From: Podarcis cretensis
Taxonomy: Eukaryota
Direction of reading: 5' to 3'
Assembly (NCBI GenBank): GCA_951804945.1
Contig: OX638161.1
Location: 39,742,001-39,806,000 of the forward strand
Length of the DNA: 64,000 nt
Shown: positions 10,597-58,473 of the stretch, one piece after another
Numbering within the stretch: position 1 is the first letter of the stretch
Layout of the letters: each line of letters opens with the position of its first letter
Program-made: the position numbers and the translations under genes
The notes under the pieces: generated by a model
Seen by the model: the letters and a program-made list of their open reading frames with translations, nothing else
Told to the model about the DNA's origin: nothing
Database searches by the model: none

Positions 10597-10631
<35 letters not shown>

Positions 10632-10958: not shown

Positions 10959-11429
10959 CTCCACCCGGGAGGGGGCACTGCCTAGACAAAGGAGAGAAAC
11001 CGGATACCAATGTAGACACATGCCAGACATATCCAGGACACCGGCACTCTTTGCTATGGTGGCTCCATTAAAAAAAATAAATCTGATATGTTCCATTTAC
11101 ACAATGGGATGGGTCAAGAATTTTCTGATTTAAAAAAAGAAAAAGGTGCCAGTTGTTAAAATTAATTGCAAAGAACCATGGTGCTGCCTTATATTCAGTC
11201 AGACTTGTCCACCAAACCCAATATTGTCTACTTCTGACTGGCTGTGTCTCTCCAGGGTCTCAGGTATGAGAACAAGAACCTCGCTGCATCAGATTAAAGG
11301 CCAAATATTCCAGCATATAGTCTCTGTAGTGGCTGTTCAGAAACATATGCGGAGCTCATAAGCAGAACCTGAAGGCAAGACCTGTCTCCTCTGCTGTTGT
11401 CCATCAGAGACTGGCATACAGAGGCATGC

Positions 11430-35619: not shown

Positions 35620-35899
35620 GAATGCCCACCGTCTTTGCCCCACATCCCCCTCTAAAAGTGCCCGCCCCACTCCTCAGCTCCGAGACATTCCCCGCCTCTT
35701 TCCCAAACGGAGCGAAATCGCTTTCGGTTTCCATTTCGCCGGAATCAAAAGCGACTGGCATCTTTAAAGCGCAGCAGCCGCTGCTTCCCCGCCCTCCGCC
35801 TTGAGGCGAGGTAGGGCGGCGGACCTATTTTGGTCCTTAGTCATCGTCGGCCGGGAAGCTGCGCGGAGATCTTCGCACCTGCATCTTCCAAGAGACGCG
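35620..35899 (+). promoter_or_regulatory. CpG-rich promoter and non-coding exon 1 of the sacsin-like gene
   Basis: GC boxes (CCCGCCCC 35661-35668, CCCCGCCC about 35787-35794), TTTAAA at 35763-35768, and donor GCG|GTGAGT at 35899/35900 upstream of the ATG-bearing exon. Confidence 0.7.
35720..35738. promoter_or_regulatory. Interferon-stimulated response element (ISRE/IRF-E), three tandem TTTC units
   Basis: GCTTTCGGTTTCCATTTCG equals TTTC-NN-TTTC-NN-TTTC and matches the ISRE consensus TTTCNNTTTC. It lies in the proximal promoter. Confidence 0.7.
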
Positions 35900-36952
35900 G
35901 TGAGTAATAACAGACCGCAGGTGATGGGGACCGATTCAACAGGACTCCTGGGCTCCTTGGGAGGAGTAACGGGGTTTAAACAGGCTTAGAAGAAGTACGA
36001 GCGTCTCTGGAAACACAGCGAAATGCTCTGATCCTAAACACATTTGCTTAGTTAATACAGACACTTCTAGCCCACCTTTCCTCCAAAGAGCGCAAGGTGC
36101 CTCGTTCGCATTTTATCCTCCCAACAGCCTGGGAAGTAGGCTAGGCTGAGAGATTGGCGTCTGCGAGCCATCGCTTTTGAGGTTTTCCTCACCTAGCAAA
36201 TTCCCCGCAGAAGCAAAAAGCTAATACTTCAGGCGGGGGAGAAAAATATATAGCTCGGCCTTGTTCCTATCGCTCTAATTTCTACTTGCAGGGAACTCGC
36301 CTTTTCTTCTTATAAAACTTGGGAGGGAAAGTTAAAACGTCGACTTGCCTTGACGTTTAGCCTTGTCGACTAAAATGGTGCAGTGCTGGGCTCTTAGACC
36401 TCATTCACCTAGTGTAGACTTGGCTTATAGTGTGACTATACAGTAGAAATACAAATATGGCTGTATTCTAAATGGTACTGCGTGAAATTACCACCGTTTT
36501 GCATTCTGGGGAACCACCTGCGTCTAGTTGGCCTGGCTGGCAGGCATTCAAAAGGCGAAACTTTCCCTACCGTCTGGATGCAGTGATAATCAGGGAAGAC
36601 CTTGTCACTTGAATGAATTTTGTTTCCCTGCATATAGCAATTAAAAGAAAGGCTGAAGAATGTGAGGTGGCAAGTGAGCAGCCCCACTGTTCTGGTACCC
36701 AAGCAATTCCTATAAAACTGTAGTTGGGAATCTACAAATGTAAACCCCTCCCCTTTGCTTTCTTGACACTCACCCCAGACACCATCTGGGCTCTGCATCC
36801 TCCTCCATTGTTTTTGGCTGGCTTGGAAGGTGTCCTTGAACATTTTTGATAATGCCTTTTGTTTGCATAGATATATAAGTTTGTGTCCATCTAGAAGCCT
36901 CTAGCGTTGAGTTTGCTGGGATGTTTCCTTCTTGATGAGGGTAAGAGGCACA

Positions 36953-38650
36953 CCCATTTCTCTGTCCACTTTTTGCTTCTTGCCATGCCCCCCACAGGCA
37001 TGTGATGGCCAGAATGTGGACTTTGGGCTGAAAAAAAGGTTTCAGTCAGAGCACATCCTCTCTTATCAACCCTTGGTAGGAAACACAAAAATTTCTCTGG
37101 AAATGATGATTCTGCAATAGTTGTAACGGATCATGTGCTTCCATTGTATTCTGGCTCTGTAAATGTGTTGTTTATTGTGTGTTTGGCTGTCTTGATGGCT
37201 GAAAAGGAGTGAACCAAATAACCTCAGTGACCTGTGATGACCAGGGGATGTGTCTCTTCCCCTTACGTGTTTGTGATCCATTCTTCCAAAGTGCTCCCCT
37301 TAAAATTAGGGGAGCTGAACAAGTTTACAGTTGGGTCTGTAGTTTGAAATGATGCAGGGATATTTGATAAATTATTAGTAGGGTCCACGCTACTAGGTTA
37401 TGCAAAATGCAGCTGGACTGAGAAACATGAGAAAAGACAGGAATATTAGGAGGTGAACAGTGGAAAGCCTTGGGAGGAAAGTTCCCATACAATAATACTT
37501 CAGTATAATTTAGGGAAACATCACTTTAAAATATGCAGAACTGATTTTTAACACCTTTTAAGTTGTAACAATTAAAAAAATGTAAAAAGTGTTGTTGGAG
37601 GGGCTGTTGGGGAGTTGGATCTTATATGTGGTGGGATTGTAAGTATGTTGCCAAATTTTGGGGAAAGATTTTTAATGAAACCTCAGCAATAATTGTCGGG
37701 GGGCAGGGAAGGGATCCCCAAAGCACCTGAACTGGATCTGTTATTACAGGGGGAAATCAGAAAAGCTTACATAAACAAGTTCTTGGTGGGGCTCCAAGAA
37801 TCTCAGTGACGAGATTTGGAGGGGGGGACTTACAAGAGTTGAAACACAGCAAAATAGTACAACACAGCATGGGAAATCATGTTAATTGACGTATTGATAA
37901 GGGTACGTTTGACCTAGGGTAAAAAAGAGAGACATTTTTGGTGGCCTTTTATTATGTACACAAGAAAGGTGGTGTGAAACCTATGCCACTGGTCTTTAGA
38001 AATATCTGGATTATGTAACTTTTATTTGTTCAAAGGCAACATACTCTCAGGAAAAGAACAGTGCAGGCTTGATTCTTTGTATACACTGTCTAGTTTATTT
38101 GTATGTTCATTTTATTTTGTAATCTTTGGAATGCTTTTGGTGTCAAATGTTTTAATTTAATAAACAATAACTATAATAAATAGTAAAAAGGTTGTATGCC
38201 TGCATAAGAAAATGAATAAAAGATGAACTGACACAGGACAAGAACTGGGAGTTGGCAAGAGTTCAAGGAACTTGATAAGGTGCTGAGAGTTGTTAGGAGA
38301 CCCCTGTTCCCTTCACAGAGCTACAAATCTCAAGAGTGATTTCACAATAAATCCCTCTTCCCAGAGAACTCTGGCAATTGTCTTCCCGTGAGGGGAATTA
38401 GAGGTTCCTAACAACCCTCAGCACCCTTAACCAACTACAGTTTCCAGGAATCTTTGGGGGAAGCCATGACTGTTAAAATGGTATAATAGTGGCTCATCAT
38501 TTCCGGAGAAATTTTTGTGTTTCCTACCAAGGGTTGATAAGAGAGGATGTGCTCTGACTGAAACCTTTTTTTCAGCCCAAAGTCCACATTCTGGCCATCA
38601 CATGCCTGTGGGGGGCATGGCAAGAAGCAAAAAGTGGACAGAGAAATGGG
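36953..38650. repeat. 157-bp inverted repeat (arms 36953-37109 and 38494-38650)
   Basis: The arms are reverse complements with one mismatch seen (CTCTGGAAAT vs rc of ATTTCCGGAG). The ORF track shows the same peptide on opposite strands (36932+ and 38435-). Confidence 0.92.
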
Positions 38651-39445
38651 CAAAATATCTGGCAAAATATATATCTGGCAAAATAGCGGTTTAAATAAAT
38701 ATCGTCCACCTTTCCTGTCCACCTCATAGAATTGTTGCACAGTCTGTTGGCTACAAAAGCACATTCCAGATCACAGTCAATCTTAAGTAAGCTTACTCTA
38801 AAGTGAGTTGGGCCCAATGGCTTAAAAGGACTTAATTTTAAAAAGTGATGGGGGGGGGGTTATTGAGTTGTTTTTTTGATTATGTACTTTGTGTTTTTAT
38901 ATTGTGATTTTATCCTGTGAACTGCCCTGAGACCTGCAGGTATAGAGCAGCATACAAATTTAATAAGTTACAGCAATAATAATTTAGTAAACGTGTTTTA
39001 GATCGGAAGCAGATGACACAGAAAGATGCCACACTGCTTGTGGCAGGCTTGGACTGTTTGCTTTTGCCTTTGGTAACAGAAGTCACATCCTTACCATACA
39101 TTTAAAGCACCTGGTTTTCCCCAAAGAATCCTGGGAACTGTAGTTTCTTCCTCACATAAACTACAGTTTCCAGCACACATAACAAACTGCAGCCTGGCAG
39201 GGTTTTCTATTGTTCCAAAATCCCTTGGATGAGAGATGACTGGGGGGGGGGGGAGTGTTTGTAACATCATGGTAAGTGATACCTCTTGTCTGTTTTGTTA
39301 AAAAATGTCCATTTACAGAAGGAACAATAGTTTATGAGCTCTTTTTTTGTTCAGTGGGGACCAATGTGCAAATCGTATTGGTGAGATTATATACTCCATT
39401 TTTTCCTCATTCTGCATTTTTCTCCTCACTTTTGCAGGTATCAAC

Positions 39446-39465
39446 ATGTCTCAGGGGCAGAAGAG
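39446..39465 (+). CDS. Sacsin-like coding exon 1 (MSQGQKR); exon starts at 39438
   Basis: Acceptor CTCCTCACTTTTGCAG|, start context AACATG, donor AG|GTGAGA. Phase 2 matches the next exon. Confidence 0.7.
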
Positions 39466-40234
39466 GTGAGAAATGCTGTGCGTGTGTATCCATGGGATTT
39501 CTCATGGACAAAAAAATGCCAGTGAGACTGTGCTGGATGTGCTGATCATAGAACTGTAGAGTTGAAAGGGACCTATCGGGGCCATCTAGTCCAACCCCCT
39601 ACCATGCAGGGATCTCAGCTAAGGCATCCATGACAGGTGGCCATCCAACTCTGATTAAAAACCTCCAAGGAAGGAGAGTCCACAATCTCCCGAGGGAGAC
39701 TGTTCCAATGTCAAACAGCTCTTACCACCAGAGAGTTCTTTCTGATGTTTAGTCAGAACCAAATCTATCTGGGATCTGATAACACCTTGCTTAAAACATT
39801 GCTGACTCTTCCTCCAAGGAGCTCAGAGTTAGAACGAGTGTGTGAAGAACTGGCCCAAGGTCACCCAGTGAGCTCTGTGGCTCTGAGGGTTAGGCTGTGG
39901 GCAGCAGACTGGGGTGAGAGCTTGCAGTGAGAACCAAAAGTTAAATGAGGATGCAGGATGAAGAAGCAAGTTAGGAGCAAAAGGCTACAGACCTCTGGGT
40001 ATAGGGTACAGTGGTACCTCAGGTTACATACGCTTCAGGTTACAGACTCCGCTAACTCAGAAATATTACCTCGGGTTAAGAACTTTGCTTCAGGATGAGA
40101 ACAGAAATTGTTCTTTGGCGGCGCGGTGGCAGCAGGAGGCCCCATTAGCTAAAGTGGAGCTTCAGGTTAAGAACAGTTTCAGGTTAAGAATGGACCTCCG
40201 GAATGAATTAAGTACTTAACCTGAGGTACCACTG

Positions 40235-40275
<41 letters not shown>

Positions 40276-43200
40276 ACGAGATGTCAGGTAGACAAGCCTT
40301 GAACAAACCTTACCTGGAACAAGAAGTTCACTTACAGTTTTTGCTGGCCAGTAGGATCCAATAGCCAAGCTGGGTCAGTAGTGGCAGCCCAGGGTCCTTG
40401 GAATACTAAATTGTCCAGGCACAACAATGCAGTGTCACTCAGGAGGGAAACCTGCACACAGACCCAACAGCAGAGTGAGGATTTAAACTAGGAGTTAGGA
40501 ACCTTCGGACCATGGGCCAGTTGCCTCCTTATTCTGATTATAGTGTTTCTCACCCCTGCTAAACTTAAGGTTGCAAAGGCCTTCTATTGTAGCCAATAAT
40601 AAGCTTTTCCCCAAGCTCAATTGGGTTGTGTTGTTTTTAGGGTGGTGGGTTTGCAGCTGGGTCCAGAAGCGTGATTAATCCTTTTCTCTCCCCACTTATA
40701 AACCCTCCACAATGTATTTTAAAAGAAGTCTTCTTTTGCCGTAATGGTTGTATGAGAGGGATGATCTTCAGAGAGAGTGCAGTTGGAGAGGGAAGGGTTA
40801 ACCCATCTCTCTTCTCAGCTGAGATTTCCAGGAATCTCTCTCTTTCTCTCTCCTGGCAATTAGGCTTGCTAAAAGTTAGAAGGCTTTTTTCAACCCCAGT
40901 TGCTGTGCATGTTAATACATCTCTCTGTCTCTCTCTGTATATGCATGTACACCTGTGTATGCTTGTATTATTGTGCATTTGGTGGCTACACACACAACTG
41001 GGAATGTGGCTCTCACAGAGGTGGAGCTAGCTGCTGCGGCACCAGGAGCTGCGCACATGTTGTGCACCCAGGGGGCAGGGCGAGTGTCCCAGGGGGGCGC
41101 CGCCTGCGCCAAGAGTCCCAGGGGGCGAGACACCTAGGGGGGCGAAGCAAGCCACCCATGGCAGGTTGCTTCCTGGGCAGGGTGGGGACAGGGAGGGAGC
41201 CACGGCGCTTTGCCAGCAGCCTTCCTCCCTTCCCTCTTCCTTTTGACAGCTCAGGAGAGGCTCCCCCCAAAGGAAGCGGGGGGGGGGCAATGGCGAGCTG
41301 CTCATCCGCAACTCCCAAGCCTCCTTCGAGCTGTCAAAACGAAGGGGGAAGGGGGGAAGGCCGCTGGCAAGGCGGCGCAGCTCTGCCCCTTCCCCTGATG
41401 GCTTGGGATATGCTTGGGAGTCATGGGCGGGCAGTGTGTCGAACATCAACCCCCTCAGTGATGACACCCGGGGTGGACCGCCCCCACCGGCCCCCCTTCC
41501 TTCGCCCCTGGACTCTCAGGCCAAAAAAAATTCCCTACTCCAGACTGAAATCTAGGAGTGGCTGGTGTGGACAACCCCTCTTGCTACACCATTGCTACAG
41601 TGTACTTGGGCAGTGCAAGGGTTGGGCAGGTCAGCAGTGAGGTCAAGGTTGCCCAGGTGCACCACCCCACCCCACAGCCTGGTCCTGCTTAGATTGAAGT
41701 CTCTCTGTTTCTATTCATATACTCTAACTACTGTAACCGTCTGCCTTTCTTTCAGGAAGGGCTTTCGACAAAAATCACCTCCTGTCCTCAAATACTTGCA
41801 GGGTATCCTCCGCAAGTACCCAGATGGGGGTCAGATCTTAAAAGTAAGTTTTTTAAGCATTGGGCCTGGACTTTTTGCATTTGCCGTTTTTGAGAGCGAA
41901 GCTATTTCACATGGATTGCATTTTAAGTAGGGATTTAACAACTTGCGTGTTCACAGAGAGGAGGCAGTCAAACACCCAGATTTTGGGGGAAGAGAAGTAA
42001 GATTGCAAGTTTAGAGCAGGAAGCTGCTCTGAAGCGCAGGCCCAAAGGACGGCTTGTGGGAGTGGCTGGGTGCAGGGGTACCAAAGAAGGGTGTCAAAAA
42101 CATCAGAATGGCCAGTTCTAGTGCAATATTAAAGAAGGTACAGATTTGCAGCAAAGAAGCCTGCCAGGTCTCCCAGCCTTTACAGATGTGGGACAGCAGC
42201 AAGGAGATGGCTTGCCCTCCCTTTTCTAAATAGGTAAAGTTTGAAAGGGGTGATATTGATGACCCCTGTATATGTCTAGCAGTTTATGGGATGTGGGGCT
42301 GGCATCCATGTAGCAATTTCCACAGTTGTGTCTGTGTTGACCCCTGGCATTTATTCCTACTCTCATTCTCTTCTTCTTCCTGAAGGAGCTGATCCAAAAC
42401 GCAGATGATGCGGGGGCTGAAGAGGTGATCTTGCTCTATGATGCACGGAGTTTTGGAACCCAGAGCCTTTTCTCAGAGGGGCTGGCAAGCACCCAAGGTA
42501 TGGATTAGACAGCTCCCAATGGTGGGTGCTCTGGGGGCCCCAGCAAAGAAATCACAAGGTATCCTATAGGGAGGAGGTTGGCTGGATGAAATTCATAATA
42601 ATTTTTCAGGGATGCTTTCAAGGGCCAAAGGCTTCCTTTTTAGCAGTCAGTAACCAAGGCTCCTCTAAGTTCTCCTTATATTGACACCAGAATGATTCTT
42701 TGTGCCTGGGAAAGCAGCAGTGAACTTCCTCTACTTTGGGGCCATTTCGTCCCACAATGCAAACAAGGAAAGCTGCAATGATGTAGTGTCCTTCCAGGTG
42801 CCTTGTGGGAGGGAAATATGGCTGTACAGTAGTTTCCCACATTCTCATTTCTGTGCTACAATATCCATTTTGGGATAGATGGAAAACACTGGCTATATAT
42901 GCTCTCACAGGGGACGCGGGTGGCGCTGTGGGTAAAACCTCAGCGCCTAGGACTTGCTGATCGCATGGTCGGCGATTCGAATCCCCGCGGCGGGGTGAGC
43001 TCCCGTCGTTCGGTCCCAGCTCCTGCCCACCTGGCAGTTCGAAAGCACCCTTAAGTGCAAGTAGATAAATAGGTACCGCTTTATAGCGGAAAGGTAAACG
43101 GCGTTCCGTGTGCTGCTCTGGTGCCAGTTCGCCAGAGCAGCTTCGTCACGCTGGCCACGTGACCCGGAAGTGTCTGCGGACAGCGCTGGATCCCGGCCTT

Positions 43201-46200
43201 TAGAGTGAGATGAGCGCACAACCCTAGAGTCTGGCAAGACTGGCCCGTACGGGCAGGGGTACCTTTAACTTTACCTTTATATGCTCTCACAGTGACTGTT
43301 AAAGTCGTATAAATGTGCTTTAAACAAATGATGTGAGTACCTGAGAGTGCACCTCCAGTATATTCAATATATTGGCTCTATTCCAGTATCACATCATGGT
43401 TTGCAGAAATCTTAATCTAGAAAAGAGATGGGGGGTGGCGGCTGTGGCTCTCCAGATATAGTTGATCTCCAACTCCCATCAGTCCCAGTGATTATAGCCA
43501 ATGGTCAGGGATGGTGGCAGGGCTCTCCAGCCCTTGTTTATAGGACCTGGTCTGCTTCTGATAGCAATCGGGTTTATTAGCCTGCTCCCATCTCTCTGGT
43601 GCCACAGCCCTCTGGAGGTGGCTGTTACCACGGTTTGCTAAATTAGACAGGATCTCGTGCCACAAAACGTTCAATCATGATTTCTGTTTTGGTTTGCTGG
43701 CCGATCACAAACCCTAGTTTGCAATTCAGACATTGTGCCATGTCAAATTTGGCTTGGGAGTGCCACTGTGAATCAAACCATCATCAAGGGACTTGAGTAA
43801 AAATTGCATGACCACATTTCTCTTTTTCAGGCCCTGCACTTCTTGCCTATAACAACGGTCTATTCTCTGAGGCTGACTGGGAAGGGATCCAGAGTCCAGG
43901 CATCAGTCACAAGGAGGATGACCCTTCTACAGTTGGACGCTTTGGCTTGGGCTTCAATTCAGTTTACCATATCACAGGTGAGAAGTTCTGCCTGGCTCAA
44001 TTTGGGAGATTGTCAGTCTTCAAAACGAGATGTCTTTGGGAGGAAGGCATAAGAATTATAGGGAAAAGGCCTAGAAGACAGCTCAGGACCCCAAGACCTC
44101 AGGGACCACCTCTCTGTCCTCACATCAGCATACCTGGACCCTGCAATCATCCTCAGAGACCTTTGTCTGTGTACTTCTTCTGAGGGGGAGGGAATGGGAG
44201 AATGGGCTTTCTCAACAGTGGCTCCCCATTTGTAGAATGCTCTCCCCGGCGAAATATGCCTAATGCCATCATTGAGATGGGGGAAATTGAGAGAGATAAA
44301 GATTAATTGAAATAGCATGAAGGGAGAAAAGGAACCAAGTCTGGGGCAACCACATTTTAATGGCTGAATTCCTCCCCTTCACTCTGTTTAGATTTCCCGT
44401 CTATACTTTCTGATGAATGTTTGGGGGTGCTAGACCCACAGCAGATGGCATTACATGACGGGGGTCAGCTCTGGGAGGTGAGTGAATGGGAAGAGGCATC
44501 CGACCAGTTCCAACCATTCTGGGCAGCACTGAAGTCTCTGGGCCAGCCTTGCCCAACTGCGGAGGGCCGCTTTCCAGGCACCCTGTTTCGCTTCCCGCTA
44601 CGACAGAGTCCATCAAAGATCTCAGAAAATCTCTACAGTCCAGAACGGGTGCAGAAACTGCTGCTCTCGTTCGTGAATGATGCCCCCATTAGTTTGCTGT
44701 TCCTCAGGAACATCAAGAAACTGACGTTGGGTCTCATTGAGTCCGATGGTGCCATCCGCGAGCTGCTGAAGGCTGAGGCCACCACTCACCCATTTAATGG
44801 GTTGGGCATGAGCCAAGGTGTGCTTGAAGTTGCAGAATGCAGTAGTGGAAAGGCAAACCTTGTTGATGATGCTATGGGCACTAAACTGGACATGGGTGTC
44901 CACATCAAAACACTTACTCTATGTGGCACTGGGACTGGACAGGCCAGCAAGTGCAACTGGCTTGTGTTGTCTGCTGAAGCGAAGAAGGATGCCTTCCCAG
45001 AACTGTGGGATCTCGCAGTGAAGGTCAGCTCTAAGCCTGTGTTGTCCTTGGCTTACTGTTTGCAAGACAAGTGCATGGGACGCCTCAGCTGCGTCCTGCC
45101 GCTCCCGGCCACAGAGGAAAACACCACTGGATTGCCACTGCACATCAGTGCCCCTTTCCAGCTGACAGATGACCGAAGACACGTGCAGTGGTCTGAAGAG
45201 GGGTCCCAGGCAAGGGGAGCCGATGGTCGTTGGAATCACTTGCTTATGGAGGAGATGTTGCCTGTTGCTTATTGCCAAATGGTACTGCTGGCATCTACCT
45301 GTCCGGACAACCCATATGGGGCATGGCCAGACCCAGACCAAAGCCAACAACTCCGATACAAGCCTTTAGTGGTTCAGATATGCCAGACACTGATGGACAT
45401 GAAACTCTTGGTACGAGTCGGGGGTGGGGAACCTCGTTTGCTCCACCCCTGCAAAGCCGTGATCTTGCCAGAGGTAGTGAGTGGTAAACCAGTAGAGAAG
45501 GCCCTGGAGAAGGCCCTCATTTTGGCAGGATCACCGCTTGCAGCTGCTCCTCTCCATGTGCGGCGAGCTTTGGTGTGGGGTGCCAAAGGCAGGGCAGCGG
45601 TGCAAGAGGCCACACCGAAGTTTGTCAGGGAGACCCTGCGACGGACTACCAGTGTGTGGCATGGGATATCCTTGACAGAAAAACAGATGCTGTTGGAGTA
45701 CTTGGTTGGAGATGGGTGTTACCAGGAGCTGAAGAATCTGCCACTGCTGCCGACAGCCAATGGAAACTTTACCTGCTTTGGAGATTCTGGAGAGACGGTC
45801 TTCCTCGATAACCACAACTTCCCCAGGTGAGCAGTCTTACCACATATGATCCCCAGGGTAAACCAGCATTGTCCTTTTCGCCCTACCACAGTTAAATGTC
45901 CTCGCCCTATTAGATGTTCCAATTAATGGACTTGCATAATGGTTAATGCACGCATGTGCACACGCACACATACACACCTTGCAAGGCAGTTCACAAATGT
46001 CTTCACTATGGCTCATTTCAGACATTGCACCAAACCAAGAGACAGAGGCCCTTATGCACTTTTTTCATATGCATAGTTCGGCTCAGTGTCTCCCCTAGCG
46101 CCAGCCTGCACTTCTTTGAGACCCAGTTTTCACTCTGAGAAATACTGCCCTACAGGAAAGAGGCCCATGCTGCATTTCTTTGATTCCCTAAAATGGTTAG

Positions 46201-49200: not shown

Positions 49201-52200
49201 GCATGCTGAACTGCTCCTCGTGATAGCTGTCCTGGACTGGCTGTGCGCTCGTGGCTACCATGGAGAAAGGGAAATGCCAGTGCCTGTGCGGATTCAAGGA
49301 CTGTCCGGTTTTGTTCTACGCCCGGCCAGTTCTGTGCTGTACTGTGACATGGATCGGGCACACCTTGCTGAGCTGGATGGCGACCCACCTACTTTGGTGC
49401 ATGAATCTGTTTCCTCTGCCACTGCTACCTTCCATGGTGTGGAAATGCTCAGCACACGGTTTTCAGGCTTGGAAGTGTTGGAGGCTCAGGCGTGGGGTCC
49501 TTCGGAGCCAATCACCCTCCGGATCCGTAACATTCTTCGTGAATACAACCAGGATGCAGATGTGTTCCTGGAACTGCTGCAAAATGCTGAGGATGCTGGT
49601 GCCCAAACTTGCCGCTTCTTAGTCGATCTCCGTGAGCATAACGGTACCACTGAAGGGCTCCTGGACCCGGGCATGGCTGCCTGCCAGGGCCCCGCACTTT
49701 GGGCCCAGAATGATGCGTTCTTCACCGAGACAGATTTCTCCAACATCATCCGTCTAGGTGCAGCTACCAAGGAACGGCAGGATGACAAGATTGGTCGCTT
49801 TGGGCTGGGCTTCTGCACTGTCTACCACATCACTGATGTGCCCTCTCTTCTCAGTGGCCACACCATGCTCATCTTTGACCCAAACATCACCCACCTTCGG
49901 AAGCATATCCGTAATTCAGGCCAACCAGGCATGCGTCTCACATTGAACCGAAAAGTCACCGCTGGATTTCCAGAACAATTTCGACCGTTCAGAGGAATCT
50001 TTGGCTGTCAACCTGGAGATGATTACCAAGGCACGCTCCTCCGCCTGCCCTTCCGCACTGAGGAAGAGGCAGAGGACTCTCAGATCTGCTGTGATCCGTT
50101 TGGACCCAGTCGAATCAAATCCTTGCAAATTGGTTTCCGGGAGATGTACAAGTACCTGCTGATCTTCCTGAGAAAAGTGCAGGAGGTGTCACTGACCCAC
50201 CTTCCTCATGGTTCCAGTTCCCCAGAAACCACCCAGCCATTAGCCACAGTGAGCAGGAAAGCACTTGTCAGGATGGGTACGTCCACTATTGTGCAGTTGA
50301 CAGCAACATGGAAGTCGAGTGTGGTCACCAGCCATTACCTGCTGCACTCCTGCTCTGCTCAAGGAGAAGCCCTTCAGGTCTTCAAACAGGGAAAAGAAAA
50401 GGATGTCCATTTCTCGCCTCCTGTTGCTAGCGTTGCTTTGCCCCTCCGCCCCGCCACTGCTGCTGGAAAATGGGTTCCAGATGTAGATGGTTTTAAGGGC
50501 CGTGCCTTCTGCTTTCTACCTCTTCCTATTGAAACTGGACTCCCGTTGCATCTCACGGCAGTCTTTGCTGTGCAGAGTAATCGCAAAGGACTCTGGGAAG
50601 CTACTGAGAAGGGGAAATGGAACAAGGCGCTCTTACGGGATTCCGTGTTGGGTGCCTGGCTTGGAGCTCTGTCCCTGCTCCGGGACATGTACGAGGAAGG
50701 ATTGCTGGAGGACTATGAGTACCATGCTTTCTGGCCTGACGTGCGCAGTGCCAAGCACCCATTCAGTGAAACAGTCAAGGCCTTCTACCTAGCCTTAGTC
50801 AATGGTGTTGATGGGGAACAGCCAGTTCTCTTTTCTGATGGACAGCAATGGTGCCCAGCCCGGGATGCCTGTATCCTCAATTCTGACATTACCTGTCAGG
50901 AGCATCTGGAACCTATAGCTTTCAGGGTCTTCTCTTTACTTTTGCCAGAGCCAAAGATGGCGGTGTCAGTTCCAGACTGGGTGAAGATGAACTTCAGAAC
51001 TTGCATCCAGGGGGATGTCCTGTTGCCAAACACCTACAATTGGGCACGATTCCTCTCTGAGCTTGTTTTGCCCAATCTTGCTCAGCTGGCAGTGCCTGAT
51101 CGCGATGTCCTCATTCTTCATGCTCTGGATATGAATGATGCTGGCGTGAATAAGATCCTGACATCCTGGCCTTGCATTCCAACTGTCCCCAATAGTTTGC
51201 TGAGAAACATTAAAGAACTTGTACACCCAAGGGGCTGCGCTGCACCTCTCTACGCTCCTGAAGATGGCCGTTTCCCCACGGGCACAGGGTTTCTGGAACC
51301 AGAGAGGCTGTTGCGCTTGGAGCATCTTGGCATGGCCAAAGATTGTGTAGAAATGGAGGAACTGATAGCCCGAGCCAGAACTGTGGCAGCCTTGTGGAGT
51401 CATGACCCAGTCAAGGCCTGCCAGCGTGCTCGCTGCATCCTAGAGCTCCTTGAGGACCACCTGCAGGAAAGCTACAGCAACACTACCCAGGTTACTTTCA
51501 GAGACATTCCCTTCTTGCCAGCAGTACTACCTGCTAACCAACGCAAACTCTGCTGCCCCAAAGAGGTTTACTACCATAAGCTGCACCCCCTGGTAGGCTT
51601 GACTGAGCCTGTCCTGGACAAGACAGCCCTGGGTAAAGGCTTGAAGCTCTCCATGGAGCTAAAGGAATTCCTAGGACTGAATCGCCAGCCACCAATATCT
51701 ACAGTGCTGACGCAACTGGAGGAAGCATCACGTAGTTCCAATGCCCTGTCCAGAATGGAGCTGGGAAACATAGCACAAATCTGCTATGCGTTCCTGAATG
51801 AAATAGTGCAGATGAACCCTCTGTCCAAGGTGGAGGTGTCCCAAAGGGCAAGCACATTCCCCTTTGTTTTCATGGACACTGGCTTTGTGTCAGTGTGCAG
51901 TGTGGCCCATTGCCTGTTCTTTGATGCTGCTCCATACCTCTTCCAGCTGCCTCAGGAGTACCAGAAGCAAAAGATGCTGTGGGAGTGTGTTGGGTTGCCT
52001 GCGACTTTCAAAGTGAAGGACTATGCCACTGTGTTGCAGACTTTGGCCAAGGAGGGAGCTGGACAGTCTCTTTCCAAAGGGCATCTGGACCTAGTTGTCA
52101 GGTTGATCACTGTAGGGCTGGCCGAGGCCCTGCCAGAGGGTCAACAGTTGAGTCCTTATGAAGCCCAGAGTGTATTTTTCCCAGACAAACACAAAGTCCT

Positions 52201-55200
52201 TCGACCATTGGCCAAGCTCCTCTTTGATGACACGCCATGGCTTCTGCATGAGAAAGGGACCCTGCTCTGTCATGCCATGATTCCGCGGGAAATTGCTATG
52301 CGCTGTGGCATTCAGACCACAAAAGGTCGTGTCTTGTCACGCCAGCGGATTCAGGGTCTCTCTTCCTGGGCCACAGATTTTGGAGCCAAGGAAGAAATCT
52401 GTACCCGGCTGGCCAACATCCTCCGTGAGTACTCCTCTTCACAGGATGTGCTAAAGGAGCTTCTGCAGAACGCAGACGATGCTGGAGCAAATCTTGTCCA
52501 CTTTGTCTGGGATCGGCGACGGCACCCGACTGATCGCGTCTTCAGCAAGGAGTGGAATGAACTTCAAGGCCCGGCACTTTGCATCTACAATGACCGCAAC
52601 TTCCAGAGGTGTGACATAGAAGGGATCCAGCGCTTGGGCTCTGGTGGCAAAGGTGGGAGGAGAGATGCTACCGGCAAATATGGACTAGGTTTCAATACAG
52701 TTTATCACTTGACTGACTGCCCTGCCTTTGTGACGGGGGACACTGCTCTGTGTGTCTTTGACCCCATGTTGCACTACCTCCCTGATTCTGATGAGATCTC
52801 ACCTGGTGGAATGTACAACCTTGCTAAAGAAGTCAAAGACACCATCCGTGATGTTTATAATACCTTTTTACCTGATGTGTTTAACTTGGAACAAGGAACA
52901 GTTTTCCGGTTACCCTTACGTACTCCTGATGGTGCAGCCTCATCCCGTATCTGCCAGAGCTCTGTGTCCGAGGAAGACATGAAGAAAATTGTGGTGGCTC
53001 TCATTGAAGAAGCCGACAGCCTTGTGATGTTCCTCAACCATGTTCGCTGCGTGGTCTTCTCTATAATAAGTGAGAGGGGAGGGACACCGAAGGAGGTGCT
53101 GCGGGTAGAGGCTGAAGGTGGTGAGCCTGAAAGACTGGAATACCAGAAGCGTCTCCAACAGGCTGCTGCAGCAGGTGGAATGGATGATGGCGAGCCAATG
53201 AGAGTCTTCTACAGAATGAAGGTGAAGAGTAGTATCTCCAATGTTTCCAGCAACTGGCTGGTAGGTAGGCAGATTGGGCTTGAGAGGGACAATACCGTGC
53301 AAAACATGGACTTGGCGTGTGGGGGTGTGGCAGCTTGTTTTGACGGACGGCCACCTGGTAGGGCCTTCTGCACACTGCCGCTTCTGGAAGAAACAGGCCT
53401 TCCCATCCACATCAATGGGAACTTTGCTGTGGACTCTGCTCGCCGTGGCTTGCGGAAGGATGATGGTGAAGGTGGTGCCAATATGTCCTGGAATAACTCG
53501 CTGCTGCAGTGTCTCATTGCCCCATTGTACTGCCACTTGCTTTATGAGCTGCGCCGGGCTCTGAATGATAGACCACTGCAGTTTCACTCCCTGACTGCAT
53601 GTGAGAAGAGGCTGGAATCAAACTATTTGCAGTATTTCCCATTTGTGACAAGGAATGTCCCCCCAGCATGGCAACAGCTGGTGACCCGTGTGTATGAACT
53701 GGCATACATGGAGCAACTTCCCTTGGTACCTGTGTACCAGAAGAAAATTAATTTCAAGCATAGATTTAAGATGGAAGAAGTGAGTGTGCACTGGAGTGCA
53801 CCCAGACTGGGCCACCCAACCAGTGATCCCTATTTCCTGCAGTCTGAGATAAGTGAGGTTCTTGAGCTTACTCTTCAGAGTCTGGGCATGAATTTTGTCC
53901 CTGCCTTCCAACATTTGCAATTGGTACGCGACCATTTTGTCAAGGCAGGAGTTGATATCCTAACCCTCGATTCTCCTTCCCTCTGCTGCTTCCTCAAGAA
54001 CCTGCCCAACTTTCTCCTGCCCTGCCCACTTCATCTGACACCTGTGAAGAATAGCTGTTACTGTTCTGCTCTCCTCGAGTTCTGCCTCAGTAAGCTTCTT
54101 CCTGATGACAAAAGCTGCCTGGAAGGTCTCCCTTTGCTGGTGACCCAAGATAACATGCTGAGGTGCTTCACTCAGCAGTGTCCTCCATACCATAGCAGTG
54201 TGCACCATCTTTTCCCACATCATCAGGACTCTTTCTTTGGCTGCCAAATTGATGGAAAGGCCAGGCAGCTGTTAGTAAAGATGGGGTTCCTAAAGGATTT
54301 TACACTCTCTGATTCTGTGGCCTTCATCAAGGAGATGCTGTCTTTGGACATCAGGGTCAGTACTGATAAAGGCCGGGAATGGCTCCGTGAATTGTGGGCT
54401 TTCTTTGAGAACCAGATCTGCATGACTGTGAATTCAGACACGATGAAAAATATGTTTGCAGAGCTAGTTTTCCTCTTCAAAGGTTGTGCCATGCTCCCTG
54501 TGTGTTGTGGCTGCACTAAGTTCTTGGTTCCCCTTGAGTCCCTCAACACGATAATGCCTGGTCAAGCAGGTACTGTTACTGAAGTTCTCCGCAAACTGGG
54601 CTTTTCCAAGTTGGACTCCTCTCTTTTGCCTCCAAAGCTCGCTGCACATTGCATTCTGCCATGTGTGTTGCAGATCGAGAATCCTACAGTAGTGCTCAAA
54701 CAACTGGCAGCTCATCATGGCCTGTGTTGGGATGCACTTGAAGGGTGGGAGTTTGAAGCGCTGTTGCGGTTCCTAAGCAGCCAACTGAAGACGCTGAAGA
54801 ATGACTGTGGATTGGTAAGCAAGTTGAAATCCTTGCCTGTGTTTAAAACACACCAAGGGAAGCACGTTTCGTTGGCTTCGTACGGGAATATCTACATCTT
54901 GGAGTCCAAGATTCCAAAGGAAACCAAGAAATTCCAGGAGCTTTATGAGGTAGATGAGAAGACTGTCCTGCTGAGTGATAGCTCGCTGAACCGACATCTC
55001 AGTAAGAGCTTGAATATTGGTGTAATGAACGATTTGCAGCAGTTTGTACAGCAGCTTTTGCCTCGGCTGTCCCATCTCCCCGAAGCTCGTGTACTGGAGG
55101 CTGTGAGATTACTCCTCCTTATCAAGAGGCATTATCCTGAGGAATATCAGGCCGAGAAAAAGACAGTGGTGACAACATTCCAGTCTTTTGCCTTCATCCG

Positions 55201-58200
55201 GGACAAGCAAGGTGTGATGCGTCCTGTGTCCTACTTTTATGAGGAGAAAATGTGTTTCAAGGAGTTGAGAATGGATTCTCTGTTCGTGCCACGCAAATTC
55301 TATGATGCAGTGTGGCCAGAGAATATATGGGAGTTGAAAGAGTTCTTACTTGATGTGGGCTTGCGGCAAGAGATCTCTGAGGAATACTTTCTAGTGTTGG
55401 CTACCCAAATTGCAAAAGAAGCATTGAGGGCTGGAGAACTGAATGATCTTGATAAAAGGAGGAGAGCACTCTGGAGCTACTTGCTTTCCAGTGAAACCTT
55501 CTCAGAGGCCTTCCTGGAAACAGTGTCCAAGATCCGTTTCCTATTGCCAAAGAAGATCTCTGAAGATCTGTGTTGCCTTCACTCGCCATACGTGCCGTGT
55601 AATACTCCTGTGGCACCCCAAGGTTCCTTGTTAACTGTGAAAGCAGACCTGGTGTGGACTTCAGCGGTCATTCTGCCTTCTGTTGAATATGTTGGGGAAA
55701 ATAAAGAAAATAAAGAAACCATCCTAAAACAACTGGGAGTGCTGCGCACCTTGCCAGCCCATTTAGTCTTGGAGAATCTAAGAAACGTATGCCAAGCACC
55801 ATGTGACACTCCAAAAGCTAAGAAAACTCGAGAGGATGTCCTAAAGTCAGCTTATGGCTACTTGTTGCAACAGGAAACGTTAGAGACTGGCTGCTTAAAG
55901 GGATTCCCTGTGGTACTAGTGGATGGCGGTGAGGTAGCAGAGGCCCAAAATGTGGTGGTCTCATTAAAATACCCACAGGACTTCCGGCCATATCTTTACA
56001 AGCTACCACCAAAGCTAGCTATCTATATGGATATCCTGGAGAAAGTGGGAGTGGAAGATGAGGCAAGCATCCATCACTATGCCAGTGTTCTGGCCAGAAT
56101 TCATGCAGAGACTGTAAGGCAGGCTAAACTGCACGCCAACCTCACCAAAACAGTGCTCAGGGCCACTCAGTTCCTCTTCCAGCTCTTAGATGAAGCAAAG
56201 GATCAAATGGATTTCTCAGAGCTGAAAGAACTGCATCTGCCTTGTGCTGATGGGAAGCTATATCCATCAAACAGCCTCATCTTTAGTTTTTACAAGCCTG
56301 GCCAGGAACCCCAGGGCTTGCAGTGCAAATTTCGCTTTCTGATAGATCTCTCAATATGTAATCTACCTTACGACAAGTATAAGCAGCAGAGGCTTCTGCA
56401 TCGGCTGCCTGAAGCCTTGCGCCCCAAGAACTTGTCAGATATCACTGAAGAGCAGCTGGAAGAGTCCTCTCTGAAACTCTGTACCTATGGGGAACACTGT
56501 GAGTTCCAAAACTGGCTACAAGAACTACTCATGTCTTGCGAGTTCCAGCATGCTCTGGTTGCACTGCTTAAATGGCAGGGTGGGACAAAAGTAGAGGAAG
56601 TGGAATGCATGTTTGAAGGACGCTTCTCACCGGAGCGGCTAGAAGTGGTTTGTTGTGAAAAAGTGTGCACAACCATGGTGCACAATTTGCAGAGTGTGGA
56701 AGGAACCCAGTGTGCCAGGACAGTGTATGTTGCAACAATGCCAGATGGTAAACTGCAGATTTACCTTGCACACCAGGAGAGCAAAGATGCACATTGGGGT
56801 GTGGAGTTCTCTGGCAATTTAGCCACAGAACTGAATAGGCTTTTAGGACAAAGACAAAGATTTAAACTGTATGCCCTGATGGTCCTTGAGCAGATTTTGG
56901 TTTGCCAAAGGCCTAAGGAAATTGCTGAGGTGCTAGAGAAAAACAAAGTCCCCTTGCAGCTGCCAGCAAATCTAAATGCCTATATCCTGCCTCCTCCTGG
57001 AGAGGACATCCCTGAGGAATGGTATGACAGCCTGGACATGAGCATCCTCCACACCTTTCTGCCAGAAGATTACGTGGGTTACCTGGATTCTTCCAAGCCC
57101 AGAGAGCATTACCTCTACGCTGTGGTCCTTGAAGCCCTTGGGCCACGGCAGAGCGGTACTGGCCAAGTACACACATACCTTGTTGACTTGGGAGGAGGGC
57201 GGCATGCAGAAGTCAGTGCCTATGACCTTTACCATTTCCGGAGGAATAACTCTGCATCTGATCTGAGTAAAGCTGTGGTCTTGGCAGAAGGCTCCCCTGG
57301 TGCTAGCAGTACTGCAAGACCACTTACAAGTGGCAATTGGTACGAGAGACCACTGAGTAAGATAAAGAAAGAAGTGGATGCCTGCTTGGCTGAAATTTGG
57401 AGCTTGTCAGAGGATGAGAGGAGGAAGGCTTTAAGAAGACTCTATCTGTGCTACCACCCAGATAAAAACATAGGTCAAGAGGATTCTGCCAATGAAATTT
57501 TCAAATACCTTAAAGACAAGATCAAGGAGATGGAGAACAATAGAACGCCCAGTGGCTCCAGAGGGGGACCCAAAAGTAGAGGTTCCTACAAGAGGAGCTC
57601 TGAATTTTGGGGTGAATGGGACCAGCAAGCTCATCAGCATCAAGAGAGGCGTACAGAATTCACCAGGCAAAGATGGGGTGGGGGTGGAGGAGGATGGGAT
57701 GGGGGTGGAGGAGGAGGAGAAGGAGGCCGCTGCAACTACAACTTCTGGTCCTTCCATCAGAGAGGGCCAAAGTATTCAAAGGATCAATCAAAACTTCGCT
57801 GCTTGGAGGAGGCCAGGCGCTGGCTAAGGCAAGCCAAGTGTGATCTGAAGGCGGCAGCCAGTAATGCTGGTCAGGGTAGCACTGAATGGCTTCTTTACAA
57901 GACTTACCGGGCAGTGGAGAAAGCCCTGACAGCAGTTGAATACTACCAGGGAGGTCGCTTTGACAGGAATCTGACTCTTCCAATGCTGGCTAGTAAGGTA
58001 GCTTCTTATGGACAGGAGTTGGAAAAGCTGCCTGATCAGATTGAGGAACTCCGGCAGCATGGCGTGGATGACAAGAGAACGCAGTATCCCAGCTACCACA
58101 ATTCACCCACCATTCCCAATGAGGCTTTCCTTAAATGCAAGGAGAAGGAGGTGCTGCTTTTAGCAGGAGATATCCTAAGCGTGGTGAAGAAGTGGATTGG

Positions 58201-58210
58201 CCTAGAATGA
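39446..58210 (+). CDS. Sacsin-like protein (SACS paralogue), about 4,234 aa; join(39446..39465,41756..41843,42386..42497,43831..43977,44392..45826,46320..46408,47397..58210)
   Basis: Seven GT-AG-bounded exons join in frame (12,705 nt including the stop). The product has three sacsin repeats with GHKL motifs ([11 protein letters not shown] / [11 protein letters not shown] / [11 protein letters not shown]; GRFGLGF or GKYGLGF; GTxFRxPLR), a J domain ([10 protein letters not shown]) and a sacsin-type HEPN (EARRWLRQA...IPNEAF). Confidence 0.9.
39545..39760 (-). mobile_element. CR1 LINE 3' end
   Basis: ATCATAGAACTGTAGAGTTGAAAGGGACC...CATCTAGTCCAACCCCC, an antisense CR1 tail plus ORF2 end. Confidence 0.7.
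40009..40234. mobile_element. Tc1/mariner (Tigger-like) MITE followed by (TAA)n microsatellite (about 40237-40273)
   Basis: TA|CAGTGGTACCTCAGGTTA ... TAACCTGAGGTACCACTG|TA, with 18-bp perfect TIRs. Confidence 0.88.
41016..41510. mobile_element. GC-rich hAT non-autonomous element
   Basis: Termini CAGAGGTGGAG / TTCGCCCCTG with a near-identical 8-bp TSD GGCTCTCA / GACTCTCA. Confidence 0.65.
41756..41843 (+). CDS. Sacsin-like coding exon 2 ([29 protein letters not shown])
   Basis: TTTCTTTCAG| ... |GTAAGT; homologous to the start of sacsin repeat 1. Confidence 0.9.
42386..42497 (+). CDS. Sacsin-like coding exon 3 ([11 protein letters not shown]..., GHKL motif I)
   Basis: TTCCTGAAG| ... G|GTATGG; 112 nt, in frame. 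Confidence 0.92.
42911..43277 (+). mobile_element. Full-length Sauria SINE
   Basis: Head GGGACGCGGGTGGCGCTGTGGG, (ACCTTT)n tail, and exact 15-bp TSD TATATGCTCTCACAG (42896-42910 and 43278-43292). Confidence 0.93.
43831..43977 (+). CDS. Sacsin-like coding exon 4 (GPALLAYNN...[14 protein letters not shown])
   Basis: TCTTTTTCAG| ... G|GTGAGA; 147 nt; contains the GHKL glycine-rich motif. Confidence 0.92.
44392..45826 (+). CDS. Sacsin-like coding exon 5 (1,435 nt)
   Basis: CTCTGTTTAG| ... AG|GTGAGC. Corresponds to ORF 44421-45830 with GTLFRFPLR and [18 protein letters not shown]. Confidence 0.92.
46320..46408 (+). CDS. Sacsin-like coding exon 6 ([30 protein letters not shown])
   Basis: TTTTGCAG| ... 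G|GTGAGA. This exon is needed to reconcile phase 2 and phase 1 between the flanking exons. Confidence 0.88.
46996..47132. mobile_element. hAT-type palindromic MITE (ACTACAACT...GGGAGTTGTAGT)
   Basis: CAGGGGCAGGC ... CATCTGCCTG termini with an internal palindrome. Related copies at about 43425-43530 and 46470-46610. Confidence 0.6.
47397..58210 (+). CDS. Sacsin-like giant terminal coding exon (10.8 kb: repeats 2 and 3, J domain, HEPN)
   Basis: Long pyrimidine tract acceptor CTCTCTCCTTCAG| and an uninterrupted frame to TGA at 58208-58210. [11 protein letters not shown] at 49571, [11 protein letters not shown] at 52457, HPD at 57455-57463, HEPN from about 57806. Confidence 0.95.
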
Positions 58211-58446
58211 GAGTGGTGAGGATTTTTTTGTTTAAAGTCTTGATTGACAATATATAAACATGGGCATTCTTGTAGCTGAAACATTTGGGATCAAATATTA
58301 TAAAATGGGAGCGGGGCCTGTTTGGAAAATTGATGTCTCTTCAAACAATTCCTAACTCACTAACACTGTACCATGTGAGAAAACAGGACTAGATAACCAT
58401 TCTTGAACAGTGACACTTTGTTACCTGTCTTCTGATATACAGAAAA

Positions 58447-58473
58447 AATAAAGTTGCTTTGTTAAGAAATAAA
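58447..58473 (+). terminator. Tandem AATAAA poly(A) signals of the sacsin-like gene
   Basis: AATAAA at 58447-58452 and 58468-58473, about 240 nt after the stop, followed by GT-rich sequence. Confidence 0.7.

What the first reader, a model, noticed from the sequence alone, without database searches (positions are those of the whole stretch)
35620..58473. Candidate interferon-inducible sacsin-like effector: ISRE-driven GHKL-ATPase x3 / J-domain / HEPN giant protein
Seen: the proximal promoter has GCTTTCGGTTTCCATTTCG (35720-35738), three TTTC units at the 6-bp ISRE spacing, placed between GC boxes about 25 nt upstream of a TTTAAA and 160 nt upstream of the exon-1 donor. The gene is intact (about 4,234 aa) but strongly diverged from canonical sacsin. 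Established: TTTCNNTTTC is bound by ISGF3 and IRFs, and TTTCGGTTTC is the core of classic ISG15-type ISREs. HEPN domains and GHKL ATPases recur in anti-viral and conflict systems. I also recall sacsin-annotated transcripts being induced by virus or poly(I:C) in teleost fish (not verified here). Inference: a non-mammalian antiviral ISG built on the sacsin scaffold, distinct from the neuronal chaperone SACS.
Basis: partly seen in the sequence, partly recalled or inferred. Interest (0 to 1): 0.86.

Follow-up and report, generated by a model that had tools for sequence, protein, structure and literature searches.

The report
Lizard sacsin-like gene with ISRE-type promoter
This is an intact lizard copy of "sacsin-like", a fast-evolving sister gene of the ataxia gene SACS that no search here found in mammals, and its promoter carries a strong interferon-response-type DNA motif, so it is a reasonable but still untested candidate antiviral gene.

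Summary
GCTTTCGGTTTCCATTTCG lies at 35720-35738. It is the only TTTCNNTTTCNNTTTC in the 64 kb window (0.01 expected). It matches the human ISG15 ISRE probe at 15 of 19 positions, with all three cores in register.

RNA contigs from a sister species cover 35805-35898 and leave at the predicted donor, so the motif lies about 65-85 nt upstream of a real first exon. The gene has 8 exons, canonical splice sites and no internal stop, and encodes 4,234 aa.

It is the lacertid orthologue of the database-annotated "sacsin-like" gene (93% identity to Zootoca). A tree places it in a jawed-vertebrate clade, from sharks to squamates, separate from SACS. No mammalian member was found. This clade diverges about 4 times faster than SACS.

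It has three sacsin ATPase repeats, which are homologous to the bacterial anti-phage protein Tiamat. It also has an intact J domain and a HEPN domain, but no ubiquitin-like domain.

The HEPN domain lacks the canonical catalytic arginine: Q-x4-H throughout the clade, against R-x4-H in amphioxus. An RNase effector role is therefore not supported.

Interferon induction was not tested. Orthologous promoters could not be fetched. Fish sacsin and sacsin-like transcripts are induced by virus and poly(I:C), according to published work.

Verdict: a known gene family, with a plausible new interferon-stimulated gene (ISG) candidate in a tetrapod.

The parts
35720..35738 (-). Tandem ISRE/IRF-E-like element. 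It has three GAAA cores at 6-bp spacing on the minus strand (TTTC on the plus strand).
   Evidence: It matches the ISG15 ISRE probe at 15 of 19 positions (sequence from PMC9907019).
35600..35950 (+). Small CpG-island promoter with Sp1 boxes (35662, 35789, 35814) and TTTAAA at 35763-35768.
   Evidence: CpG o/e 1.0-1.27. It is single-copy in DNA run X13.
35805..35899 (+). Exon 1, non-coding 5' UTR. The 5' limit is the start of an RNA contig, not a mapped transcription start. The GT donor is at 35900.
   Evidence: X15 contig positions 1-94 lie on 35805-35898. X17 depth is consistent with about 35820-35898.
39438..39465 (+). Exon 2 (28 nt), with the ATG at 39446. It encodes MSQGQK plus two bases of the next codon. 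It has a strong polypyrimidine/AG acceptor.
41756..41843 (+). Exon 3, the start of sacsin repeat 1.
42386..42497 (+). Exon 4, carrying the ELIQNADDA ATPase motif I of repeat 1.
43831..43977 (+). Exon 5, carrying the GRFGLGF glycine-rich motif of repeat 1.
44392..45826 (+). Exon 6, the rest of repeat 1 (Pfam SACS domain; about half its residues identical to the lizard and human sacsin SR1 structures in the HMMER alignment).
46320..46408 (+). Exon 7.
47397..58210 (+). Exon 8, the giant coding exon (10,814 nt up to the TGA stop at 58208-58210).
49505..50233 (+). ATPase domain of sacsin repeat 2 (motif ELLQNAEDA at 49571; GRFGLGF at 49793).
   Evidence: Matches the Tiamat TmtA models.
52391..53120 (+). 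ATPase domain of sacsin repeat 3, limits approximate (motif ELLQNADDA at 52457; GKYGLGF at 52673).
   Evidence: TmtA E = 1e-102.
57350..57541 (+). J domain with an intact HPD motif (HPDKN at 57455-57469).
57809..58135 (+). HEPN domain. The motif site QYPSYH is at 58082-58099. Q replaces the catalytic R and the H is kept.
58211..58473 (+). 3' UTR with AATAAA signals at 58447 and 58468.
   Evidence: The polyadenylation site itself was not mapped.

Best explanation
The locus is the lacertid-lizard orthologue of 'sacsin-like' (SL). SL is an ancient jawed-vertebrate paralogue of the chaperone gene SACS. No mammalian member was found in the searches made here.

The gene is transcribed from a small CpG-island promoter at about 35.8 kb. 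[quoted passage not shown] It has no N-terminal ubiquitin-like domain.

About 65-85 nt upstream of the first exon lies a triple-GAAA element of the ISG15-ISRE type. The most likely reading is that IRF-family factors (ISGF3, IRF1, IRF3 or IRF7) bind this element and raise transcription after interferon or virus sensing, as reported for fish sacsin and sacsin-like transcripts.

The protein most likely acts as an ATP-dependent co-chaperone that recruits Hsp70. Its HEPN domain probably serves for dimerisation or for RNA or nucleotide binding, not as a canonical RNase, because the catalytic arginine is absent.

Shown here: gene structure, paralogy, position of exon 1, presence and rarity of the motif, state of the domain motifs, fast evolution.
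Inferred: IRF/ISGF3 binding, interferon induction, antiviral role, biochemical mechanism.
For: Gene and family:
- Pfam finds the SACS domain in three places, plus HEPN and a weak DnaJ hit.
- PDB matches include the sacsin SR1, J and HEPN structures.
- The best hit is Zootoca 'sacsin-like' at 93% identity, and orthologues are annotated in squamates, turtles, birds, frogs, sharks and ray-finned fishes.

Paralogy: the IQ-TREE tree separates an SL clade (100) from SACS plus the cyclostome sacsins (100). The window sequence is sister to Zootoca.

Evolutionary rate, SL against SACS for matched taxon pairs (turtle and bird are represented by different species for the two genes): 61 vs 91% identity (agamid-gecko), 44 vs 87% (agamid-bird), 38 vs 71% (agamid-chimaera). 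Conservation peaks on the three ATPase domains, so the protein is under constraint.

Promoter:
- The motif is unique in the window, with 0.01 expected.
- It matches the ISG15 ISRE probe at 15 of 19 positions.
- RNA contigs of two runs from different studies end at the 35899 donor.
- Exon 2 has an acceptor site and therefore needs an upstream exon.

Precedent in fish:
- Cod 'SACS' rose 10-17 fold after poly(I:C) (PMC3534563).
- In lumpfish, sacs-like went up while sacs went down after poly(I:C) (PMC11357929).
- Trout sacsin-like was induced by IPNV in all responding leukocyte types (PMC11258392).

Immune ancestry: the sacsin repeats match the anti-phage Tiamat TmtA models at E = 1e-102, as described in bioRxiv 10.64898/2026.09.30.755639.
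Against: - No induction experiment or comparison of conditions was possible.
- The element departs from the strict ISRE consensus on its flank (GAAAGC or GAAACC instead of GAAACT).
- The promoter is a CpG island with Sp1 boxes, a type common in constitutively expressed genes. No GAS or NF-kB site is nearby.
- One raw RNA-seq run of the sister species (X24, 12% of it read) had no read on exon 1.
- It was not shown that the virus-induced fish transcripts are orthologues of this clade.
- The rest of the RNA contig that starts in exon 1 could not be seen, so its link to the downstream coding exons rests on splice-site logic.
Confidence: 0.5

Rival explanations
1. The gene is a constitutively or tissue-specifically expressed chaperone paralogue, and the triple-GAAA element is not an interferon switch. 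On this reading the element is either a chance match or a low-affinity site. The fast evolution would reflect relaxed constraint on a partly redundant SACS duplicate, not conflict with viruses.
For: - The promoter is a CpG island with Sp1 boxes and has no GAS or NF-kB site.
- The motif flank departs from the GAAACT consensus.
- Near-full-length transcripts are held by six small probable-RNA runs from several studies, with no known stimulation.
- The canonical HEPN dyad is lost.
- Birds have lost the HPD motif of the J domain, which fits loosening constraint.
Against: - The motif is expected 0.01 times in the window, yet it sits within 100 nt of the first exon.
- Fish family members are strongly induced by virus (PMC3534563, PMC11357929).
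- The gene has stayed intact, with conserved ATPase domains, from sharks to squamates.
Confidence: 0.3
2. The element is an IRF site that sets basal, lineage-restricted expression, for example through IRF1, IRF2, IRF4 or IRF8 in leukocytes, and not acute ISGF3-driven induction.
For: - Repeated GAAANN hexamers are classic IRF-binding elements (established knowledge).
- The ISGF3-preferred 3' flank CT is missing.
- Expression differs between RNA samples: present in X15 and X17, absent from the part of X24 that was read.
Against: - No tissue labels were available, so lineage restriction was not tested.
- The ISG15 element it resembles is a true ISGF3 target.
Confidence: 0.15
3. Exon 1 at 35.8 kb belongs to another transcript, and the sacsin-like gene starts at a different promoter closer to exon 2.
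For: - The part of the X15 contig beyond the donor could not be inspected.
- The 3.5-kb intron 1 contains repeats.
Against: - Exon 2 is only 28 nt long and has a strong acceptor, so it cannot be a first exon.
- The contig leaves exactly at the GT donor and runs on for 879 nt. That would fit exons 2-5 (375 nt) plus part of exon 6.
- There is no other CpG island or RNA coverage of unique sequence between 35.9 and 39.4 kb.
Confidence: 0.05

Closest known systems
SACS (sacsin), the chaperone mutated in spastic ataxia of Charlevoix-Saguenay
   Same: Three sacsin repeat regions carrying the ExxQNAxD and GxxGxGF motifs, a J domain with HPD, a C-terminal HEPN domain, and one giant terminal coding exon.
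   Different: - Only about 30% identical, and in a separate clade.
- No ubiquitin-like domain: PF00240 is recorded for SACS proteins but for none of the sacsin-like proteins.
- About 350 aa shorter.
- Diverges about 4 times faster.
- The HEPN site reads Q..H here and R..L in SACS.
- In lumpfish the two genes respond to poly(I:C) in opposite directions (PMC11357929).
Database-annotated 'sacsin-like' genes of squamates, turtles, birds, amphibians, sharks and ray-finned fishes
   Same: This gene is their orthologue. It is 93% identical to the Zootoca protein, and the gene tree follows the species tree.
   Different: None of substance. The promoter element and the HEPN state reported here are not part of those annotations.
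Fish virus-responsive 'sacsin' and 'sacsin-like' transcripts (cod, salmon, trout, lumpfish, sea bass, sole, grouper)
   Same: They share the family name and probably the clade. Every non-SACS fish protein sampled falls in the sacsin-like clade. They are induced together with ISG15, viperin and LGP2 (PMC3534563, PMC8875540).
   Different: The identity of the induced fish transcripts with this clade was not shown. No tetrapod induction data were found in the literature searches.
Human ISG15 promoter ISRE
   Same: Three GAAA cores in the same register. An 11-nt core, TTTCGGTTTCC, is identical. Overall 15 of 19 positions match.
   Different: The flank reads GAAAGC instead of GAAACT, and the orientation relative to the gene is inverted. 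No binding or function was tested.
Tiamat (TmtA), a bacterial anti-phage defence protein, and plant NO VEIN
   Same: The sacsin-type GHKL ATPase plus solenoid repeat is homologous. TmtA models score E = 1e-102 on repeat 3 and 1e-72 on repeat 2 (bioRxiv 10.64898/2026.09.30.755639).
   Different: Tiamat and NOV carry one repeat and a PD-(D/E)xK nuclease. This protein has three repeats with J and HEPN domains. The homology holds for the whole sacsin family, SACS included.

Membership tests
Sacsin family | Three sacsin repeat regions with the SACS/Hsp90-like ATPase domain (PF25794) | tested here: met
   Pfam SACS E = 1.3e-160 with 2 stretches in the giant exon, plus one in exon 6. The ExxQNAxD and GxxGxGF motifs are present in all three repeats.
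Sacsin family | C-terminal J domain with HPD, followed by a HEPN domain | tested here: met
   PDB 1IUR E = 5e-14 and 3O10 E = 1.6e-20. HPDKN is present. Pfam HEPN E = 3e-11.
SACS orthologue (canonical sacsin) | Placement in the SACS clade, with high identity to SACS of the same taxa | tested here: not met
   About 30% identity to Pogona and human SACS. The sequence sits in the separate sacsin-like clade, which has 100% support.
SACS orthologue (canonical sacsin) | N-terminal ubiquitin-like domain | tested here: not met
   The protein starts about 10 residues before repeat 1. No PF00240 hit is recorded for any sacsin-like orthologue, whereas many SACS proteins carry it.
Vertebrate sacsin-like (SL) paralogue | Monophyly with annotated sacsin-like proteins, and a gene tree that follows the species tree | tested here: met
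   sister to Zootoca, then Rhineura, other squamates, turtles plus birds, frogs and fishes.
Interferon-stimulated gene with an ISRE | ISRE consensus (GAAANNGAAACT type) in the proximal promoter | tested here: inconclusive
   There are two overlapping GAAANNGAAA cores 65-85 nt upstream of exon 1, and 15 of 19 positions match the ISG15 ISRE. The 3' flank differs from the consensus.
Interferon-stimulated gene with an ISRE | Transcript induced by interferon, poly(I:C) or virus | not testable with these tools
   Only unlabelled RNA runs of a sister species were available, and they show presence alone. Induction is published for fish relatives only.
Interferon-stimulated gene with an ISRE | The element is conserved in orthologous promoters | not testable with these tools
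No other tool reaches vertebrate genomes.
HEPN RNase | Rx4-6H catalytic motif | tested here: not met
   The aligned site reads T-Q-Y-P-x-x-H throughout the vertebrate sacsin-like clade, against R-Y-P-x-L-H in amphioxus. An arginine two residues upstream occurs in only a minority of the sacsin-like sequences, so it is not a conserved substitute.
Tiamat-type sacsin-repeat ATPases | Match to TmtA profile models over the ATPase plus repeat region | tested here: met
   PADLOC TmtA E = 1e-102, 1e-73 and 1e-72. This shows homology of the module, not membership of the bacterial system: the nuclease domain is absent.

The most novel reading that the evidence does not exclude
Sacsin-like may be an ancient interferon-induced antiviral effector of jawed vertebrates, built from the same ATPase-repeat module as the bacterial anti-phage protein Tiamat. 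On this reading it has been kept from sharks to reptiles under rapid, conflict-type evolution and was lost in mammals. It would act through ATP-driven remodelling with Hsp70, plus a non-catalytic HEPN domain that binds RNA.

A more speculative extension follows from the reciprocal state of the HEPN site: R without H in SACS, H without R in sacsin-like. Because HEPN active sites form across a dimer, the two paralogues could complement each other.
Probability: 0.3. Interest if true: 0.65.

Novelty: new member of a known kind. Interest (0 to 1): 0.45.

Why it matters
- Sacsin has been studied almost only as a neuronal chaperone. Fish immunologists have repeatedly listed "sacsin" among their top virus-induced genes without saying which gene it is.
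- This analysis shows that jawed vertebrates carry a second sacsin lineage that diverges about 4 times faster. No mammalian member was found.
- The lizard copy has an ISG15-type element at its promoter. This gives a concrete tetrapod gene and a 19-nt site on which to test whether the antiviral regulation seen in fish is ancestral.
- The finding links vertebrate sacsins to the newly reported Tiamat/NO VEIN "ancestral immunity" module.
- It also shows that neither vertebrate paralogue keeps a complete HEPN RNase motif. That narrows the possible mechanisms.

Tried and rejected
Steps that failed or gave nothing:
- Looking for the ATG in exon 1: there is none. A first regular-expression search for the N-terminal peptide failed. 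A search that allowed for the splice site then found the 28-nt exon 2.
- Raw RNA reads (X24) gave no coverage of exon 1, so no start site, strand or expression level could be read. Most of the depth in that stretch comes from intronic repeats.
- Two word-indexed protein searches did not return canonical SACS. SACS sequences were reached only by way of hagfish sacsin.
- Literature searches for sacsin with ranavirus or avian influenza found no tetrapod induction data.
- The findings index held only this same note.

Ideas considered and rejected:
- The gene is SACS itself: rejected by the tree and the identity values.
- The HEPN domain is a canonical RNase: rejected by the missing arginine.
- The motif lies in a repeat: rejected, because the promoter is single-copy in the DNA run.

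Full report
**Observation**

- TTTAAA follows 25 nt downstream, at 35763-35768.
- A GT donor lies at 35900.
- The surrounding 300 bp form a small CpG island (CpG o/e 1.0-1.27) with Sp1-type boxes at 35662, 35789 and 35814.
- No GAS or NF-kB consensus lies within 35300-36000.
- The pattern TTTCNNTTTCNNTTTC occurs once in the 64 kb window on both strands, against 0.01 expected from dinucleotide-preserving shuffles.
- GAAANNGAAAC also occurs only here, against 0.68 expected.
- The ISG15 ISRE probes printed in PMC9907019 and PMC5131898 share the 11-nt core TTTCGGTTTCC with the window. All three cores are in the same register and 15 of 19 positions match.
- The flank that reads GAAACT in ISG15 reads GAAAGC or GAAACC here.

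**Gene model**

A tblastn of the Zootoca protein against the window, together with direct reading of the junctions, gives eight exons.

| Exon | Coordinates | Note |
|---|---|---|
| 1 | about 35805-35899 | non-coding |
| 2 | 39438-39465 | ATG at 39446 |
| 3 | 41756-41843 | |
| 4 | 42386-42497 | |
| 5 | 43831-43977 | |
| 6 | 44392-45826 | |
| 7 | 46320-46408 | |
| 8 | 47397-58210 | giant exon |

All coding junctions are AG/GT, the phases are consistent and no exon has an internal stop. AATAAA signals lie at 58447 and 58468. Exons were searched singly by reference.

**RNA support for exon 1**

- A 973-nt contig of X15 lies with its first 94 nt on 35805-35898 and then leaves the stretch exactly at the predicted donor.
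- The bin depths of X15 are fully explained by that contig.
- The bin depths of X17 fit a contig at about 35820-35898.
- X15 and X17 have zero depth on unique intron sequence (36250-36849 and 37050-38249) that the DNA run X13 covers. This supports the tool's guess that they are RNA runs.
- Together with four similar runs, they hold about as many words of the 10-kb exon as that DNA run does. The giant exon is therefore transcribed.
- Exon 2 is only 28 nt long and has a strong acceptor, so it needs an upstream exon.

Three caveats apply. Contigs cannot fix a transcription start. The remaining 879 nt of the X15 contig could not be viewed. The raw-read run X24 had no read on exon 1.

**What the gene is**

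- Pfam finds the SACS domain in exon 6 and twice in the giant exon, together with HEPN and a weak DnaJ hit.
- The PDB search matches the human and lizard sacsin SR1, J-domain and HEPN structures.
- The best database match is 'sacsin-like' of Zootoca vivipara (93% identity). Annotated orthologues follow in other squamates (62-76%), turtles (about 52%), birds (about 44%), frogs, sharks and ray-finned fishes (34-38%).
- No mammalian member appeared in any search.
- Anolis sagrei sacsin-like aligns with about half its residues identical to the crystallised 'lizard sacsin' SR1 domain. In the same alignments, human and lizard SACS are about 90% identical to each other. Lizards therefore carry both genes.

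**Tree and evolutionary rate**

Canonical SACS sequences were obtained through hagfish sacsin. I then built a tree of 57 proteins over 4,323 columns (IQ-TREE, LG+G4, quick search, SH-aLRT support).
- It separates SACS plus the cyclostome sacsins (100) from a sacsin-like clade (100).
- The sacsin-like clade contains sharks, gar, sturgeon, teleosts, lungfish, frogs, turtles, birds and squamates.
- The window sequence is sister to Zootoca, and the internal order follows the species tree.
- The tool warns that these two long stems meet. The depth of the split is therefore less certain than the separateness of the two clades.

Identities for matched taxon pairs; the turtle and bird are represented by different species for the two genes:

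| Pair | Sacsin-like | SACS |
|---|---|---|
| agamid-gecko | 61% | 91% |
| agamid-turtle | 51.5% | 88% |
| agamid-bird | 44% | 87% |
| agamid-frog | 40% | 78% |
| agamid-chimaera | 38% | 71% |

Sacsin-like thus diverges about four times faster than SACS. Conservation along sacsin-like peaks on the three ATPase domains, so the protein is constrained and not decaying.

**Domain states**

- All three repeats keep the ExxQNAxD and GxxGxGF motifs.
- The J domain keeps HPD in squamates, turtles, frogs and fishes, but not in the birds sampled.
- The HEPN site that reads R-Y-P-x-L-H in amphioxus reads T-Q-Y-P-x-x-H in all sacsin-like proteins with that region, with one penguin exception at the H.
- The same site reads T-R-Y-P-D-L-L in jawed-vertebrate SACS.
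- Anantharaman et al. (PMC3710099) already noted that human sacsin lacks the motif.
- Neither vertebrate paralogue therefore has a complete Rx4-6H dyad, and a canonical RNase effector role is not supported for this gene.
- There is no ubiquitin-like domain.
- The repeats match the PADLOC models of the anti-phage protein Tiamat (TmtA) at E = 1e-102 and 1e-72. This agrees with a 2026 preprint that unites Tiamat, plant NO VEIN and sacsins in one family (10.64898/2026.09.30.755639). The match is a property of the whole family, SACS included.

**Interferon question**

- Cod 'SACS' rose 10-17 fold after poly(I:C), beside ISG15, LGP2 and viperin (PMC3534563).
- In lumpfish, sacs-like rose while sacs fell after poly(I:C) (PMC11357929).
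- Trout sacsin-like was one of eight genes induced by IPNV in all responding leukocyte types (PMC11258392).
- A review lists sacsin among the core genes responding to nodavirus (PMC8875540).
- All non-SACS fish proteins in my sample fall in the sacsin-like clade. It is therefore likely, but not shown, that the induced fish genes are orthologues of this lizard gene.
- No tetrapod data were found.

The CpG-island/Sp1 character of the promoter and the imperfect flank leave room for two alternatives: constitutive expression, or basal expression driven by IRF factors.

**Verdict**

The gene is a known, annotated family member. Interferon regulation is a well-motivated hypothesis, which I put at about one half. 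Interest is moderate.

Noticed in passing
window 58082-58099 and alignment: The HEPN catalytic site has decayed in opposite ways after duplication. Jawed-vertebrate SACS keeps the R but has lost the H (TRYPDLL). Sacsin-like keeps the H but has Q for the R (TQYPxxH). The cyclostome sacsins have lost both, and amphioxus keeps RYPxLH.
   Followed up: partly
alignment (bird sacsin-like proteins P0028, P0032, P0033): The bird sacsin-like proteins sampled lack the HPD motif of the J domain (YNP followed by a deletion). They also sit on a very long stem (0.72) in the tree. No galliform or passerine member appeared in the hit lists.
   Followed up: no
window 8016-11096 (-) and 24284-25408 (-): Two C2H2 zinc-finger ORFs lie upstream on the opposite strand: one of 1,026 aa with 12 or more fingers, and one of 374 aa. 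Whether either shares the 35.8-kb CpG island as a bidirectional promoter was not examined. RNA contigs showed no coverage at 35650-35804.
   Followed up: partly
window 34643-35065 (+): A fragment of a reverse-transcriptase ORF (Pfam RVT_1, E = 6e-5), probably a LINE remnant, lies just upstream of the promoter.
   Followed up: no
window 38250-38650, 38850-39250, 39450-40250: Introns 1 and 2 hold high-copy interspersed repeats. Summed contig depth reaches millions in the DNA run, and the repeats are also abundant in the RNA runs. One element has a sharp boundary at 40006/40007.
   Followed up: no
window 57677-57718: A glycine-rich low-complexity run ([14 protein letters not shown]) lies between the J and HEPN domains. 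It is present but variable in length in squamates and absent from turtles, frogs and fishes.
   Followed up: no
(cluster sizes): At 90% identity, one SACS cluster holds 805 sequences under a bird representative and another holds 1,242 under the human representative. Sacsin-like clusters hold 1-18 sequences each. This is an independent sign of the difference in evolutionary rate.
   Followed up: yes
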